Source: Octopus sinensis (lineage: Eukaryota). Taken from it: 64,000 nt of DNA. The notes under the pieces are model-generated. The model ran no database searches. It was not told the origin of the DNA and worked only from the letters and a program-made list of their open reading frames with translations. The translations under genes were made by a program, and so were the position numbers. How positions within the stretch are numbered: the stretch's first letter is position 1; the number at the start of each line of letters is the position of its first letter. The stretch is taken from NCBI RefSeq assembly GCF_006345805.1, contig NC_043021.1, forward strand, positions 20,522,001 to 20,586,000, given 5' to 3'. Of the stretch, positions 17,879-36,399 are shown piece by piece.

Positions 17879-18129
17879 TCACTTTGGTATAGAATCCATG
17901 TCAGAATTAGTTGGCTGTTTAGCTTTTGGAATATCTTGGACTTGTTCTGTTTTGTAACTTGCATTAGAGACATCATTCCGGGGCTCAACATCACTTGTTA
18001 CCAAGATGTCTTTCGCAATACATTCATTCATCAATCCACTGGCATATAGTCTTCTTTCTTTTGCTTCGTCAGCTTCTTGCCACATCTGCAGCGGGGAGGA
18101 ATGAATCTCAGAACTCAATTCTTCATTAC
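17879..18129 (-). CDS. DIABLO: Smac/DIABLO-like protein terminal exon 5
   Basis: ttttatattttcaaag|GT acceptor (phase 1). GNEELSSEIHSSPLQMWQEADEAKERRLYASGLMNE...SIPK*. Joined CDS is 741 nt = 246 aa. Confidence 0.72.
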
Positions 18130-18163
18130 CTTTGAAAATATAAAAGAAAATTCAATTTAAATC

Positions 18164-18688
18164 CCGTAAATCCTTGAGTATAATCCGCATTTTTTCCCCC
18201 AAAATTCAAAGGTCAAAATCCCTAGTGTGTACTATATATACGAGGTTAAAAATGAAAAATATTTTCTAAGCAATGTCCGAATCTCTATTTGCTGTCTGGC
18301 TATGTTTATTCAGACGCATTTTCTGATGTCGGGCGCGAAAATACCTTAAGCTAAGCCTGAAAGCAATGAAGTCATAAAAGAATCATCCATAACTTGCAGT
18401 AAGCAACATTTATTAAAATAAAAGTATTCAGAACACAGAATAACATGTAAGAAAAACAATTTGCAAACATATTTACATTCCCATATAACAGTTAAGAACA
18501 TCACCATTATTGTATTACGCATGCGCGGACATGTTTGTTCGACTAGGTGCTGCTGGCTTAATTATGCACGACTCAAGTTAGAGAAGGTGTGCATATTATA
18601 CACAAGGTTTAGGTTTTTCAGAGGTACATCCCCCTAAAAATCCCCTGCCTATTATACTCAAGGGCGGACTATACTCGAGGATTTACGG
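18164..18688. mobile_element. pogo/Tc2-like MITE
   Basis: TIRs CCGTAAATCCTTGAGTATAATCCGC / GCGGACTATACTCGAGGATTTACGG, with TA at the right end. Confidence 0.7.
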
Positions 18689-19749
18689 TAGCTACCATTT
18701 GTTAAGGTTACCACTACAGATAAGCAATGAGTTCATGGATGGTTAATAGGTTGGATGGGTGCTGATTAAGGTGCAAAAACACCTGGAATATGTCATATAC
18801 GCCAATTTCTCATTTCTCATCTTTGATCTCACCAGGTAACCTTGTACTTCCTCTTCAGCAAGACACCTATATCTGTCTCACTATATCCTCTTCATCATCA
18901 CCTCCTCCAATGATGATCTCATTGTTATTTACATTAGGTGTACTCGGATGATATGAAATATCGTAACAAAATCAGCGCTGGCTATAATTTCTATAAAAAA
19001 TCTGTAGAGATAACCTTGTCAAGAGATTTGATAGCACTGCTAACACAGTCATGACTTATTTGGTTTCAAATTTTGGCACAAGGCCAGCAAGCTTGGGGGA
19101 GTGGGGTAAGTCAATTATATGAACCCCAGAATTCATCAGGTACTTATTTTATTGACCCTAAAAGGATGAAAGGCAAAGTCAACCTCAGCAGAATTTGAAC
19201 TCAGAAAAGGCTGTGAGCTGGCAGAATTGTTAGAACGCTGGGCGAAATGCTTAGCGGTATTTTGTCTGCCGCTATGTTCTGAGTTCAAATTCCACCGAGG
19301 TCGACTTTGCCTTTCATCCTTTCGGGGTCGATTAAATAAATACCAGTTACGCACTGGGGTTGATATAATTGACTTAATCCCTTTGTCTGTCCTTCTTTTT
19401 CCCCTCTGTGTGTAGCTCCTTGTGGGCAGTAAAGAAATAAGAATTTGAATTCAGAATATAGAGACAACCAGATATTGGTTTCAAATTTTGGCACAAGGCC
19501 AGCAATTTTGGGGGAGTGGGGTAAGTCAATTATATCAACCCCAGTGTTCATCTGGTACTTATTTTATTGACCCCAAAAGGATGAAATGCAAAGTTAACCT
19601 CAGTAGAATTTGAATTGAATTTCATCCATAAAAATAGATGAAATGCCACTAATCATGTTAACGATTCTGCCAGCTCCCTGCCTTTAACCAATTTGTCTTC
19701 CAACTCTGCCAGTCCCACATCTTAGTTTCGATACAATAATGAGCATATT

Positions 19750-19920
19750 GGTGCAGGAGTGGCTGTGTGGTAAGTAGCTTGCTTATGAACCACATGGTTC
19801 CGGGTTCAGTCCCACTGCGTGGCACCTTGGGCAAGTGTCTTCTACTATAGCCTCGGGCCGACCAAAGCCTTGTGAGTGGATTTGGTTGACGGAAACTGAA
19901 AGAAGCCCGTCGAATATATG

Positions 19921-19960
<40 letters not shown>

Positions 19961-20180
19961 CGTGTATGTTTGTGTGCCTGTGTTTGTTCCCCTAGCATTG
20001 CTTGACAACCGATGCTGGTGTGTTTATGTCCCCGTCACTTAGCGGTTCGGCAAAAGAGACCGATAGAATAAGTACTGGGCTTACAAAGAATAAATCCCGG
20101 GGTCAAGTTGCTCGATTAAAGGCGGTGCTCCAGCATGGCCACAGACAAATGACTGAAACAAGTAAAAGAGAGAAAAGAGA
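19750..20180 (+). mobile_element. SINE family A
   Basis: Full-length; ends about 19 nt from the DIABLO exon 4 donor. Confidence 0.85.
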
Positions 20181-20198
20181 GTATATGACTGCACTAAC

Positions 20199-20268
20199 CT
20201 GACATAAAGGCAACTTCCGCTAACTGCACGATTAGCCTGTTCATACTGCTTAAAACCATTTGTAATTT
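20199..20268 (-). CDS. DIABLO: Smac/DIABLO-like protein exon 4
   Basis: cttctttccag|AAA acceptor, TCA G|gttagt donor. KLQMVLSSMNRLIVQLAEVAFMSG aligns without gaps to human [24 protein letters not shown] (recalled), with the same phase-1 intron at the Gly. Confidence 0.8.
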
Positions 20269-21119
20269 CTGGAAAGAAGATGAAGAAACTTTGAGGAAAA
20301 TCACTTAAAATACCATAAATTTACAAAATGCGTGAATTTGGTAGAAGGAAGCCTGGGGGTTGTAAATGAGCATCACTGTCATACAAGCGAAGATTATTCG
20401 ACCTTTGGAAGTATGTTGTGCATGAGAAGACCCGGCAGGACAAGTGAGGCCATAACCTGTGGCCTCTACCTGGGACGTAGTCAGTCCACCTGTGCATACC
20501 TTTCCTTCTTGGGACACAAAACTCTATTTGTGAAGACCTGTTAAGGCAAGTGAAAATCAAAATCGAAATCGATCAACATCAATGGAAATTGTAGCTGTGA
20601 TACCAGTGCCGGTGGCACGTAAGAGAACCATCCAAACGTGGCTGCAGCCAGCGCCGCATCGACTGGCCTCTGTGCCGGTGGCACGTAAAAAGCACCACCC
20701 GATCGTGGCCGTTCGCCAGCCTCGCCTGGCCTCTGTGCCGGTGGCATGTAAAAAGCACCCACTACACTCATGGACTGGTTGGCGTTAGGAAGGGCATCCA
20801 GCTGTAGAAACACTGCCAGATCTGACTGGGCCTGGTGCAGCCTTCGGGCTTCCCAGACCCCAGTTGAACCGTCCAACCCATGCTAGCATGGAAAGCGGAC
20901 GTTAAATGATGATGATGATGATGATGATGATCTTCCATGAAAAACATGTCTGGCCATGGGCGAATATTACCTTGAATGGAACCAATGAGAGTTGGTGAGA
21001 GGAAGGGCATCCAGCTGTAAAAAATTTGCTTTGGTAAATTTCACCTAACCCATGGAGAGAGAGAGAGAGAGGTGGGGAGATAATGATAGACAGAAAGATT
21101 ATTTACATTTGTTATTTGT

Positions 21120-34364: not shown

Positions 34365-34580
34365 GGCGGCGAGCTGGCATAAACGTTAGCACGCCGGGCG
34401 AAATGCGTAGCCGTATTTCGTCTGTCGTTACGTTCTGAGTTCAAATTCCGCCGAGGTCGACTTTGCCTTTCATCTTTTCGGGGTCGATAAATAAAGTACC
34501 AGTTGTAATCGACTTAATCCCTTTGTCTGTCCTTGTTTGTCCCCTCTATGTTTAGCCCCTTGTGGGCAATAAAGAAATAT
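34365..34580 (+). mobile_element. SINE family B
   Basis: Starts 16 nt after the tRNA-Trp gene. Confidence 0.82.
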
Positions 34581-34639
34581 GTAACATATTCAGAATACTC
34601 TTTCAGAAAATCATCCCAGTTCTCTGAGCATATAAAAGA

Positions 34640-35365
34640 CAAATTTAACTGGGGCAAAATGAGTAAATGAAGAGAAGGCAAAAGTGCTTCTTGAATTTTC
34701 TCATTTGAAACATGACTCGTACACATCAATGTTCATCCCTGAACATCAGAAAGATGAGAAATGCAACTAAAATTTGAAATATCGAAGTTAAATGAAAGGG
34801 TCATGGAAAATGGCACGCGATATGAAACTGACAAAACTCGACTAAAATCTAAAAACGCTATATAAAATATTTCTATAGCTTCTTCACGATCTGTTGGAGC
34901 AGCCTTCTTCCTAATATATTTACGGACCATGCATTTAAAGAAATCAAATTATTGAAATTACTTATTACTCATTTTGCCCCAGTTTAGACAATTTTTTTTT
35001 TTTTGAAAATTGAAAATGATCAAATTAGACATGAGTGTGTGGGGGAAAATTGACTTGGAATCCGAGAGAGAAAAGAATATCGATTGTTAAATACCATAAG
35101 CTATCCAGATTTTTACTGGCAACTTCAATTACGAGTCAAAGTTGAGGAAAAGTTTCTTGAAAAGAAATAAAAATGTACCTGTGACCTGACTGTTTCAACC
35201 TTTCGCAACTTCGACCACTATGTTGACCAATTTTTACTCCCAAAGATTATGCAACAGTACAGAATGTTGCTTTAATACTTGCAGCGTATTTGTTTCAAAC
35301 AAACAGAAAAAAAATAACGAGAAATCAGAAATTACTCATTTTGCCCCAGTTACAAATTCTCCCCA
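34640..35365. mobile_element. Degenerate DNA transposon remnant (pogo-like?)
   Basis: TTACTCATTTTGCCCCAGT occurs three times (one inverted); the - strand MVRKYIRKK start resembles pogo-like transposase N-termini. Confidence 0.35.
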
Positions 35366-35507
35366 CCACCGTCGCAGCCGGATAGAGTGAAGGGGAAAAT
35401 AATAACACAGCAGGAAATTGAAGAATTGGTGACGGATTGTAATGGAGAGCTGAATGGAGTTGATAAGATGTAATAACCGCGATAACCTAATCTCAAGTAG
35501 AAATAAA

Positions 35508-35760
35508 GGCGATCTTACGGTATTAGGGTTTCTGTTAGGGTTAGGGTTAGGTTTGTGGCGATGCTTCGGTATATGTACACACGTGACTTTGTTTACATTT
35601 CTTAAGGAGTGGCTGTGTGGTAAGTAGCTTGTTTACCAACCACATGGTTCCGGGTTCAGTCCCACTGCGTGGCAACATGGGCAAGTGTCTTCTATAGCCT
35701 CAAGCCGACCAAAGCCTTGTGAGTGAATTTGGTAGACGGAAACTGAAAGAAACCTGTCGC

Positions 35761-35792
<32 letters not shown>

Positions 35793-36154
35793 ATGCGTGT
35801 GTGCGTCTGTGTTTGTCCCCCTAGCATTGCTTGACAACCGATGCTGGTGTGTTTATGTCCCCGTTACTTAGCGGTTCGGCAAAAGAGACCGATAGAATAA
35901 ATACTGGGCTTACAAAAGAATAAGTCCCGGGGTCGAGTTGCTCGATTAAAAGGCGGTGCTCCAGCATGGCCGCAGTCAAATGACTGAAACAAGTAAAAGA
36001 GTATAACAGAAACCCTTTTCTCCCACCCCTTACCCATTCCTAACACAAACTCTAACCCTAAGAGAAACCGTAACCGTAACCCTAACCCCCCCATATATAA
36101 AAAAAAAACAACACTTTTTTGAAATGTATCCGGTACTTATACCGTAAGATCGCC
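35508..36154. mobile_element. Merlin/Mutator-like MITE interrupted by a SINE
   Basis: GGCGATCTTACGGTA / TACCGTAAGATCGCC TIRs; 8-bp TSD GAAATAAA; TTAGGG and TAACCC runs; SINE at about 35607-36002. Confidence 0.75.
35607..36002 (+). mobile_element. SINE family A inside MITE
   Basis: Full-length match. Confidence 0.85.
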
Positions 36155-36234
36155 GAAATAAACAAGAGACCAAAGAGGCCGGTTCTCTGAAAAACTATCC
36201 TCGGTCAAAACAAACCCTTTTATTTTTAACTCAC

Positions 36235-36399
36235 CGGTGTGTCGATGTCACATTGCTCGATATCAACGTGTAGGGTGCTCCGGAGTCGAGCCACAGTGGA
36301 CGTACCCAGAACTAATCGGAGGGTTTGGCTACGGATTAACGGTATACACCTACGAGACACGAAGCTGAACACTTTCGACAGTCTAAAGGCAGCTGCCAT
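36235..36399 (-). CDS. DIABLO: Smac/DIABLO-like protein exon 1 (mitochondrial presequence)
   Basis: ATG in gaagaaATGG context. MAAAFRLSKVFSFVSRRCIPLIRSQTLRLVLGTSTVARLRST... is Arg/Ser/Leu-rich with no acidic residue for about 44 aa. CCG|gtgagt donor, phase 0. Confidence 0.75.

What the first reader, a model, noticed from the sequence alone, without database searches (positions are those of the whole stretch)
17879..36399. Complete Smac/DIABLO-like gene hidden across 18.5 kb of repeats
Seen: five exons with canonical splice sites give an uninterrupted 246-aa protein; the ORF track shows only fragments. Against human DIABLO (239 aa, recalled) the presequence and the helical segments align (G..EE.E.(L/V)W..II..R.E; KL...AE.A...G), and the introns before AVYTL/LIYKL and at the phase-1 Gly appear conserved. 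Identity is low, so automated annotation may list it as uncharacterised. Smac is best studied in vertebrates, while flies use Reaper/Hid/Grim-type antagonists, so a probable cephalopod orthologue bears on the evolution of mitochondrial apoptosis.
Basis: partly seen in the sequence, partly recalled or inferred. Interest (0 to 1): 0.72.

Follow-up and report, generated by a model that had tools for sequence, protein, structure and literature searches.

The report
Octopus Smac/DIABLO gene, already known
This is a real, intact five-exon octopus gene for a Smac/DIABLO-family mitochondrial cell-death protein, spread thin by repeat-filled introns. The same gene is already catalogued in related octopuses and other molluscs, so it is ordinary apart from lacking the usual IAP-binding tip.

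Summary
On the minus strand, five GT-AG exons (36399-36235, 26892-26773, 23384-23250, 20268-20199, 18129-17879) give an uninterrupted 246-aa protein.

The protein passes Pfam Smac_DIABLO (44 bits against a cut-off of 25). By sequence it matches human DIABLO structures at E about 2e-6. It models confidently as a three-helix bundle whose 11 best PDB matches are all human Smac.

Octopus bimaculoides (95% identical, 246 aa) and Argonauta hians have the same five exons in the same gene neighbourhood. dN/dS against O. bimaculoides is 0.17. Two of the four intron positions match a bird DIABLO gene exactly, and three match Aplysia.

The exons are single-copy. The introns are 37-63% interspersed repeats, and the gene spans 18.5 kb here against 8.2 kb and 4.9 kb in the relatives.

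It is not novel. NCBI calls the orthologues "uncharacterized", but UniRef names the O. bimaculoides one "Direct IAP-binding protein…" and Pfam already tags both. Diablo has been reported in oysters, Aplysia and the bobtail squid.

One real twist: the octopod proteins lack both the hydrophobic sorting segment and the AVPI-type IAP-binding motif found in vertebrate, sea-cucumber and several other mollusc homologues. Family membership is therefore solid, but IBM-dependent IAP antagonism is unproven.

The parts
36235..36399 (-). Exon 1 (coding part): ATG at 36399, 55 codons, ends phase 0 before gtgagt. Encodes the basic presequence MAAAFRLSKVFSFVSRRCIPLIRSQTLRLVLGTSTVARLRSTLH, followed by VDIEQCDIDTP.
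   Evidence: Same exon in O. bimaculoides and Argonauta. Residues 1-45 have 8 K/R and no D/E.
26773..26892 (-). Exon 2, 120 nt, phase 0 at both ends (IPLCGIPEFDKEFLKTKDATTTLYEVTLGILVKTENECTQ). Start of helix 1 of the Smac fold.
   Evidence: Acceptor tcattcgtgtag, donor gtaagatc. Conserved exon in L001 and L002.
23250..23384 (-). Exon 3, 135 nt, phase 0 at both ends (LIYKL…EEGERLWCLIIDTRTEINDCKDKIQ). End of helix 1, the loop, and start of helix 2.
   Evidence: The intron before it is shared exactly with hummingbird DIABLO and Aplysia.
20199..20268 (-). Exon 4, 70 nt (KLQMVLSSMNRLIVQLAEVAFMS plus the first base of Gly164). Ends in phase 1.
   Evidence: The phase-1 Gly intron is shared exactly with hummingbird and Aplysia.
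17879..18129 (-). Exon 5 (coding part), 251 nt including TGA at 17881-17879. Encodes helix 3 and an acidic, low-confidence C-terminal tail.
17545..17878 (-). Probable 3' UTR. AATAAA lies at 17559-17554, and the block conserved with O. bimaculoides ends at 17545. Inferred, not shown by RNA.
   Evidence: Sequence read. Collinear block L001 17940-18559 = window 18162-17545 at 94.7% identity.
36400..36728 (.). 329-bp interval between the Smac ATG (minus strand) and the ATG of the divergently oriented prenylcysteine-oxidase-like gene (plus strand, 36729). It holds the 5' UTRs and is probably a shared bidirectional promoter (inferred).
   Evidence: Same head-to-head arrangement in O. bimaculoides and Argonauta. 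Block 38195-36155 is conserved with L001.
26893..36234 (-). Intron 1, 9342 nt, against about 4.9 kb in O. bimaculoides and 0.6 kb in Argonauta. 41% is repeated elsewhere in the window. It contains SINE-like copies at 36003-35605, 32816-32451, 31802-31400 and 30836-30655, and a 24-bp tandem array at 26972-27170.
   Evidence: No extra exon conserved with Argonauta.
23385..26772 (-). Intron 2, 3388 nt, 48% repeated in the window. It includes a SINE-like copy at 23924-23507.
20269..23249 (-). Intron 3, 2981 nt (226 nt in O. bimaculoides), 37% repeated in the window.
18130..20198 (-). Intron 4, 2069 nt (642 nt in O. bimaculoides), 63% repeated in the window. It includes a SINE-like copy at 20186-19742.

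Best explanation
The region holds the intact, selectively maintained octopus orthologue of the Smac/DIABLO gene. It is a nuclear gene of five coding exons on the minus strand. Its introns have been inflated by interspersed repeats to 18.5 kb.

Shown: the 246-aa product has a 45-residue basic N-terminal stretch with no acidic residues, typical of a mitochondrial presequence. An acidic (pI about 4.6) elongated three-helix bundle follows, and it superimposes on human Smac.

Inferred from homology: the protein is imported into mitochondria, loses its presequence, dimerises through the bundle, and is released to the cytosol when the outer membrane is permeabilised. There it counteracts IAP (BIR-domain) caspase inhibitors.

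That last step is the weakest. The octopod proteins have neither the hydrophobic sorting segment nor the Ala-X-Pro/Ala-X tetrapeptide that PARL cleavage exposes in human Smac.

My estimates: about 0.95 that this is a functional Smac-family orthologue; about 0.8 that it is mitochondrial; about 0.4-0.5 that it antagonises IAPs through a canonical N-terminal IBM-type contact.
For: - Gene model: 5 GT-AG exons giving a 246-aa ORF.
- Family match: Pfam PF09057 Smac_DIABLO at 44 bits against a cut-off of 25, E 2.2e-11, residues 73-232.
- Sequence match to solved structures: phmmer against the PDB finds human DIABLO 6jx6/1few/4tx5/8e2i/1g73 at E 2-4e-6, with nothing else below 0.25.
- Structure: AlphaFold2 with a 33-sequence alignment gives pLDDT 80 overall and above 90 for about residues 60-210, with helices 62-109, 116-162 and 166-226. 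The Foldseek top 11 PDB hits are all Smac (target-normalised TM 0.80-0.88, rmsd 1.7-3.0 A); the next hit has E 0.04.
- Orthologues: O. bimaculoides LOC106883317 (246 aa, 95%) and Argonauta LOC115224351 (265 aa, 64%). Both have identical exon boundaries and the same flanking prenylcysteine-oxidase-like gene. The window is collinear with the O. bimaculoides locus.
- Selection: dN/dS 0.17, dS 0.15.
- Intron positions: two are shared exactly with hummingbird DIABLO and three with Aplysia.
- Presequence and charge: residues 1-45 have 8 K/R and 0 D/E; the mature part has pI 4.55-4.72.
- Mechanism of the family: an AVPI tip binding BIR2/BIR3, generated by PARL (PMC5729535).
Against: - No IAP-binding motif at or near the position aligned with vertebrate AVPI. 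MAFFT puts vertebrate A|VPV opposite octopus H|VDIE. A regex scan finds no A-x-P/A-x tetrapeptide between residue 5 and helix 1 in any of the three octopods.
- No hydrophobic sorting segment. The maximum 17-residue Kyte-Doolittle mean is 0.8-0.96, against 1.4-2.0 in hummingbird, Anolis, Aplysia, the holothurian-like sequence and Sinanodonta.
- No extra conserved exon in intron 1 that could supply either feature.
- No RNA evidence from this species.
- No targeting predictor was available, so localisation rests on composition and homology.
- The AlphaFold alignment contained vertebrate Smac sequences, so the fold match is not fully independent of the sequence match.
Confidence: 0.88

Rival explanations
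1. A Smac-fold mitochondrial protein that no longer works as an IBM-dependent IAP antagonist. The octopod lineage lost the stop-transfer segment and the AVPI-type tip. The protein may therefore be processed by a matrix-type peptidase, sit in a different sub-compartment, and either bind IAPs through other surfaces or serve another role.
For: All three octopods lack both an internal A-x-P/A-x tetrapeptide and the hydrophobic segment. Hummingbird, Anolis, the holothurian-like sequence, Aplysia, Elysia, Sinanodonta and Lineus have an Ala-tetrapeptide about 20-30 residues before helix 1. In five of them (hummingbird, Anolis, holothurian-like, Aplysia, Sinanodonta) a strongly hydrophobic stretch directly precedes or overlaps it. 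The N-terminal 45 residues are as conserved between Octopus and Argonauta (31/45 identical) as the helical domain. No alternative exon is conserved. Octopus species have the least expanded IAP family among the ten molluscs compared in PMC8917759.
Against: Several other lophotrochozoan homologues (Lottia, Mytilus, Lingula, Batillaria, Babylonia) also show no obvious motif, so a missing motif may only reflect poor knowledge of cleavage sites. The helical bundle is under purifying selection. Nothing here tests binding.
Confidence: 0.3
2. The IAP-binding motif has moved to the extreme N-terminus. After initiator-Met removal the precursor would start AAAF (Octopus) or ASAY (Argonauta). These resemble the fly Reaper/Grim N-terminal motifs as I recall them.
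For: Sequence read directly. Position 1 is Ala, position 3 is Ala and position 4 is aromatic in both genera, despite two substitutions between them. From my own knowledge of peptide-specificity studies, position 2 is tolerant.
Against: The same residues are the start of a textbook mitochondrial presequence, which would be removed on import. 'MAA' starts are common in presequences (human, hummingbird, Anolis and Haliotis also start MAA). The sample is only three sequences. N-terminal acetylation of Ala would block binding.
Confidence: 0.05
3. The model is a chance concatenation or a decaying pseudogene, not a working gene.
For: No transcript evidence from this species was obtainable. Identity to human Smac is low, about 20%.
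Against: Open frame across five exons. Canonical splice sites conserved in three species. dN/dS 0.17. Pfam score above the gathering cut-off. Confident Smac-like model. Conserved gene neighbourhood.
Confidence: 0.02

Closest known systems
Octopus bimaculoides LOC106883317 (NCBI 'uncharacterized protein… isoform X1'; UniRef 'Direct IAP-binding protein…'; Pfam PF09057)
   Same: Orthologue. 246 aa, 95% amino-acid and 95% CDS identity. Identical five-exon structure and splice phases, the same flanking genes, and a collinear locus.
   Different: The gene span is 8.2 kb there against 18.5 kb here. Introns 3 and 4 are 226 and 642 nt there against 2981 and 2069 nt here, the difference being largely repeat insertions.
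Human/vertebrate Smac/DIABLO (PDB 1FEW, 1G73, 4TX5, 6JX6, 8E2I; hummingbird DIABLO gene used for intron comparison)
   Same: Pfam family. Three-helix-bundle fold (target-normalised TM 0.80-0.88). Basic N-terminal presequence and acidic mature protein. Conserved motifs EE.E.W..II..R.E and AE.A...G. Two intron positions and phases are identical.
   Different: Only about 20% identity. There is no hydrophobic segment and no AVPI/AVPV tetrapeptide. The third coding intron is displaced by 9 residues. The vertebrate gene has an extra intron inside the presequence.
Other lophotrochozoan Diablo homologues (Aplysia XP_005110230, Haliotis, Lottia, Mytilus, Sinanodonta, Biomphalaria, Lingula, Owenia, Lineus)
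   Same: Same family by profile search (E 1e-9 to 1e-3) and the same length class. Aplysia shares three intron positions exactly and also has a 70-nt fourth exon.
   Different: The octopod proteins are only 16-24% identical to them. Aplysia (ATPV), Elysia (AVAF), Sinanodonta (AVAV) and Lineus (AQPL) keep an Ala-tetrapeptide at that position, directly after a hydrophobic stretch in Aplysia and Sinanodonta; the octopods do not.
Drosophila Reaper/Hid/Grim-type IAP antagonists
   Same: Only a possible functional analogy: antagonism of IAPs through an N-terminal Ala-start tetrapeptide. The octopod N-termini AAAF/ASAY loosely fit that consensus (the consensus is from my own knowledge).
   Different: No sequence or fold relationship. 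RHG proteins are short cytosolic proteins without a Smac bundle. Not a member.

Membership tests
Smac/DIABLO (Pfam PF09057) | Sequence match to the family profile above the curated gathering score | tested here: met
   44 bits against a cut-off of 25, E 2.2e-11, profile positions 72-231 of 237. Human DIABLO is the only significant PDB sequence match.
Smac/DIABLO (Pfam PF09057) | Elongated three-helix bundle fold | tested here: met
   AlphaFold2 pLDDT above 90 over about residues 60-210 with three long helices. The Foldseek top 11 hits are all Smac, target-normalised TM 0.80-0.88. Caveat: the alignment used for the model included vertebrate Smac sequences.
Smac/DIABLO (Pfam PF09057) | N-terminal mitochondrial targeting presequence | tested here: inconclusive
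   Residues 1-45 have 8 K/R, 0 D/E and 10 S/T, are predicted helical, and have a hydrophobic moment up to 0.57. This is typical composition, but no dedicated predictor or experiment was available.
Smac/DIABLO (Pfam PF09057) | Hydrophobic sorting/cleavage segment followed by an Ala-X-Pro/Ala-X IAP-binding motif that becomes the mature N-terminus | tested here: not met
   No such tetrapeptide between residue 5 and helix 1 in the window protein, O. bimaculoides or Argonauta. Maximum 17-residue hydropathy is 0.8-0.96 against 1.4-2.0 in homologues that have the motif. No extra conserved exon. The true cleavage site is unknown, so a non-canonical motif cannot be excluded.
Smac/DIABLO (Pfam PF09057) | Acidic mature protein ('low pI') | tested here: met
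   pI 4.55 for residues 46-246 and 4.72 for residues 56-246.
Smac/DIABLO (Pfam PF09057) | Orthology with vertebrate DIABLO shown by shared gene structure | tested here: met
   The phase-0 intron before LIYKL/AIYTL and the phase-1 Gly intron are identical in hummingbird. Three of four positions are identical in Aplysia. One intron is displaced by 9 residues in the bird. Human itself was not tested.
Smac/DIABLO (Pfam PF09057) | Homodimerisation, binding to BIR domains, release from mitochondria on outer-membrane permeabilisation | not testable with these tools
   These need biochemistry or cell biology. The only pointer is that the residue aligned with human dimer-interface F33 is Leu78 (alignment; the interface residue is from my own knowledge).
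Reaper/Hid/Grim-type IAP antagonists | IBM exposed directly after initiator-Met removal in a short cytosolic protein | tested here: inconclusive
   The N-termini MAAAF and MASAY loosely fit the consensus. However, they belong to a presequence-like region of a Smac-fold protein, and there is no sequence relationship to RHG proteins. Not filed as a member.

The most novel reading that the evidence does not exclude
Octopods carry a Smac-family protein that has lost both the intermembrane-space sorting segment and the AVPI-type IAP-binding tip, while keeping the helical bundle under purifying selection. If so, cephalopod Smac either antagonises IAPs by a motif-independent route or through a relocated motif (for example an RHG-like AAAF/ASAY N-terminus), or it has a different mitochondrial role. 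That would separate the ancestral function of the Smac fold from IBM-mediated IAP antagonism.
Probability: 0.25. Interest if true: 0.45.

Novelty: already known. Interest (0 to 1): 0.15.

Why it matters
Mainly as a sanity check. A tool-free reading of raw sequence recovered a complete, correctly spliced, low-identity gene from repeat-rich DNA, and every boundary was right.

Biologically, the gene adds nothing new to the distribution of Smac/DIABLO. The family is already annotated across Lophotrochozoa and echinoderms and has been reported in a squid. The claim that it 'bears on the evolution of mitochondrial apoptosis' is therefore modest.

The useful residue is a caution for annotation transfer. 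The octopod proteins, and several other invertebrate ones, belong to the family by sequence, fold and gene structure, yet they lack the motif on which the textbook mechanism depends. Calling them 'IAP-binding' is an untested inference.

The locus also gives a clean example of intron inflation between close octopus relatives, about 2.3-fold in gene span.

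Tried and rejected
1. tblastn of a human DIABLO sequence recalled from memory against the window found only exon 3 (E 0.15) and otherwise noise. It was used only as a lead and was superseded by the Pfam and PDB searches.
2. My first enumeration of exon-2 candidates assumed the wrong phase for exon 1, which is 165 nt, not 164. I corrected this, where one candidate stood out for its splice-site context; conservation later confirmed it.
3. AlphaFold2 with only the three octopod sequences gave a poor model, pLDDT 53. 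I discarded it in favour of the 33-sequence run.
4. Word-indexed homology searches with the protein, with the octopod profile and with the 33-sequence profile returned almost only the two octopod orthologues. The exhaustive HMM search was needed to reach other phyla.
6. The closest non-octopod relative, P0005 (31% identical; source organism unknown, possibly another cephalopod), sits on a 1-kb contig whose frame hits a stop just upstream. It gave no N-terminus and no information on the motif.
7. A search for an additional conserved exon in intron 1 that might encode a hydrophobic segment and motif found only repeats.
8. The naive alignment of octopus LCGIPEF with human LCAVPIA was rejected. 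The multiple alignment places that octopus segment opposite vertebrate SLSNEALI.
9. The pseudogene or chance-ORF reading was rejected on dN/dS and conservation.

Full report
**What is there**

They are 36399-36235, 26892-26773, 23384-23250, 20268-20199 and 18129-17879.

All four introns are GT…AG with pyrimidine-rich acceptors. The six-frame ORF list shows only fragments of exons 1, 3 and 5.

**Is it a Smac/DIABLO gene?**

- Pfam gives Smac_DIABLO (PF09057) at 44 bits against a gathering score of 25. E is 2.2e-11, covering residues 73-232 and profile positions 72-231 of 237. The next families are at E of 0.05 or worse.
- A sequence search of the PDB finds only human DIABLO chains (6jx6, 1few, 4tx5, 8e2i, 1g73) at E 2-4e-6.
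- With three sequences AlphaFold2 was uninformative, pLDDT 53.
- With a 33-sequence alignment built from an exhaustive profile search the model reached pLDDT 80 overall and above 90 for about residues 60-210. It has three long helices at 62-109, 116-162 and 166-226.
- The 11 best Foldseek matches in the PDB are all Smac/DIABLO, with target-normalised TM 0.80-0.88 and rmsd 1.7-3.0 Å. After them the E-value jumps from 9e-4 to 0.04.
- Caveat: the alignment contained vertebrate Smac sequences, so the fold evidence is not independent of the sequence evidence.

**Orthologues, gene structure and selection**

- The protein database holds a 246-aa O. bimaculoides protein, 95% identical. NCBI calls it 'uncharacterized protein LOC106883317 isoform X1', UniRef calls it 'Direct IAP-binding protein…', and it carries a precomputed PF09057 tag.
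- It also holds a 265-aa Argonauta hians protein, 64% identical and also 'uncharacterized'.
- Their genomic loci carry the same five exons with identical boundaries and phases: 55|56, 95|96, 140|141, and a phase-1 Gly.
- Both have the same upstream, divergently oriented prenylcysteine-oxidase-like gene. In O. bimaculoides the downstream gene hits Pfam FAM194.
- The window is collinear with the O. bimaculoides locus at 85-95% nucleotide identity. It therefore comes from a close relative of that species. I cannot say which one.
- CDS identity is 95%, dN 0.025 and dS 0.151, giving dN/dS 0.17. This indicates purifying selection.

I mapped the introns of a vertebrate orthologue, hummingbird 'diablo IAP-binding mitochondrial protein', and of Aplysia.

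- The phase-0 intron before AIYTL/LIYKL and the phase-1 intron at the Gly after AE.A… are shared exactly.
- Aplysia shares a third position exactly, and its fourth exon is also 70 nt.
- The bird's third intron lies 9 residues upstream, and the bird has an extra intron in the presequence.

**Repeats**

- All five exons are single-copy in the window.
- 41%, 48%, 37% and 63% of introns 1-4 respectively match other places in the window.
- A SINE-like element of about 400 bp occurs six or more times inside the gene and more than 25 times in the window.
- There are also tandem arrays, including a 24-bp array of 8.3 copies at 26972-27170, 80 bp from the exon-2 acceptor.
- The gene spans 18.5 kb here, 8.2 kb in O. 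bimaculoides and 4.9 kb in Argonauta.

**How it probably works**

*Shown.* Residues 1-45 have 8 K/R, no acidic residue and 10 S/T, and are predicted helical. The remainder is acidic, with pI about 4.6.

*Inferred from the family* (PMC5729535). The protein is imported into mitochondria, its presequence is removed, and it is released on outer-membrane permeabilisation. It then neutralises IAPs through an N-terminal AVPI-type motif, which PARL generates in human.

*The problem.* The octopod proteins have no such motif.

- In the multiple alignment the vertebrate A|VPV/A|IPI aligns with octopus H|VDIE. The superficially similar LCGIPEF aligns with vertebrate SLSNEALI.
- A scan for A-[VTISAQK]-[PA]-[FYIVLWE] upstream of helix 1 finds AVPV, AIPI, AVPF, ATPV, AVAF, AVAV and AQPL in hummingbird, Anolis, a holothurian-like sequence, Aplysia, Elysia, Sinanodonta and Lineus. 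In the three octopods it finds only the extreme N-terminal AAAF/ASAY.
- Five of those motif-bearing homologues (hummingbird, Anolis, holothurian-like, Aplysia, Sinanodonta) have a strongly hydrophobic stretch directly before or overlapping the motif, with a 17-residue Kyte-Doolittle mean of 1.4-2.0. The octopods reach only 0.8-0.96.
- No extra exon conserved between Argonauta and the window could supply either feature.
- Several other invertebrate homologues (Lottia, Mytilus, Lingula, Batillaria, Babylonia) also show no clear motif. The gap is therefore not unique to octopods, and it may partly reflect ignorance of the real cleavage sites.

I conclude that family membership and fold are secure, mitochondrial targeting is likely, and IBM-dependent IAP antagonism is an open inference.

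**Novelty**

- DIABLO transcripts were reported in the Sydney rock oyster, with Aplysia XP_005110230 cited as a DIABLO (PMC4892480). That same protein appeared among my hits.
- 'Diablo homolog, mitochondrial' is annotated in Crassostrea gigas (PMC8917759).
- Diablo is listed and measured in the bobtail squid Euprymna scolopes (PMC9389742).
- Cluster names show annotated Diablo homologues in Haliotis, Mytilus, Babylonia, Lingula and a sea cucumber. UniRef 'Direct IAP-binding protein with low pI' names cover Lottia, Sinanodonta, Biomphalaria and Owenia.

The gene is therefore already known in kind, and its orthologue is already in the databases.

**Limits**

- No squid or Nautilus N-termini were reachable.
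- No targeting predictor was available.
- Statements about the need for an N-terminal Ala, about the fly RHG motifs and about human dimer-interface residues rest on my own knowledge of the published structures, not on a tool result.

Noticed in passing
window 36729-51070 (+): A prenylcysteine-oxidase/lyase-like gene lies head-to-head with the Smac gene. Its first coding exon starts at 36729 (MSRLLLSLTLLLYLRFVSAFDEELPRI|gtaagt, signal-peptide-like), 329 bp from the Smac ATG. An FAD-binding exon is around 43371-43676 and the last exon ends about 51070 (Pfam Prenylcys_lyase E 7e-66). O. bimaculoides and Argonauta have the same arrangement, so a shared bidirectional promoter is likely.
   Followed up: partly
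window ~3900-12500: By collinearity with the O. bimaculoides locus, a FAM194-like gene should lie here. Blocks 8072-7736 and 4662-4326 are 93-97% identical to L001. I did not verify this in the window.
   Followed up: no
window, e.g. 36003-35605, 32816-32451, 31802-31400, 23924-23507, 20186-19742, and many sites outside the gene: A SINE-like interspersed repeat of about 400 bp has more than 25 copies in the 64-kb window at 80-92% identity to an O. bimaculoides copy. It accounts for much of the intron expansion.
   Followed up: partly
window 26972-27170: A near-perfect 24-bp tandem array (8.3 copies, 99% matches) sits only 80 bp upstream of the exon-2 acceptor in intron 1. A GA-rich low-complexity tract lies at 26299-26456, on the other side of exon 2.
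   Followed up: no
window 21694-22182 (+) and 25206-25634 (+): Two intronic ORFs of 162 and 142 aa, antisense to the gene, look like C-terminal tails of non-LTR retrotransposon proteins from memory. Neither gave a Pfam hit at E<=0.01.
   Followed up: partly
P0003 (1348-aa protein from a 6.3-kb public contig): A tandem-repeat ORF with 22 repeats. Its unit shares 50% identity over 26 residues with the Smac exon-5 segment ECIAKDILVTSDVEPR..NASY (window 18025-17954). This may be a satellite derived from this exon, or it may be chance inflated by repetition.
   Followed up: partly
P0004 (93 aa, Logan contigs up to 1.3 kb): A product that reads exon 1 of the O. bimaculoides-type gene straight into intron 1 (…DINTPVSKKK). 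It comes from unspliced or genomic reads and is a fragmentary model of the same gene. It illustrates how the gene can be missed.
   Followed up: no
window 12001-16000: G+C drops to 0.32, against about 0.40 elsewhere, with a strongly negative GC skew at 12-14 kb.
   Followed up: no
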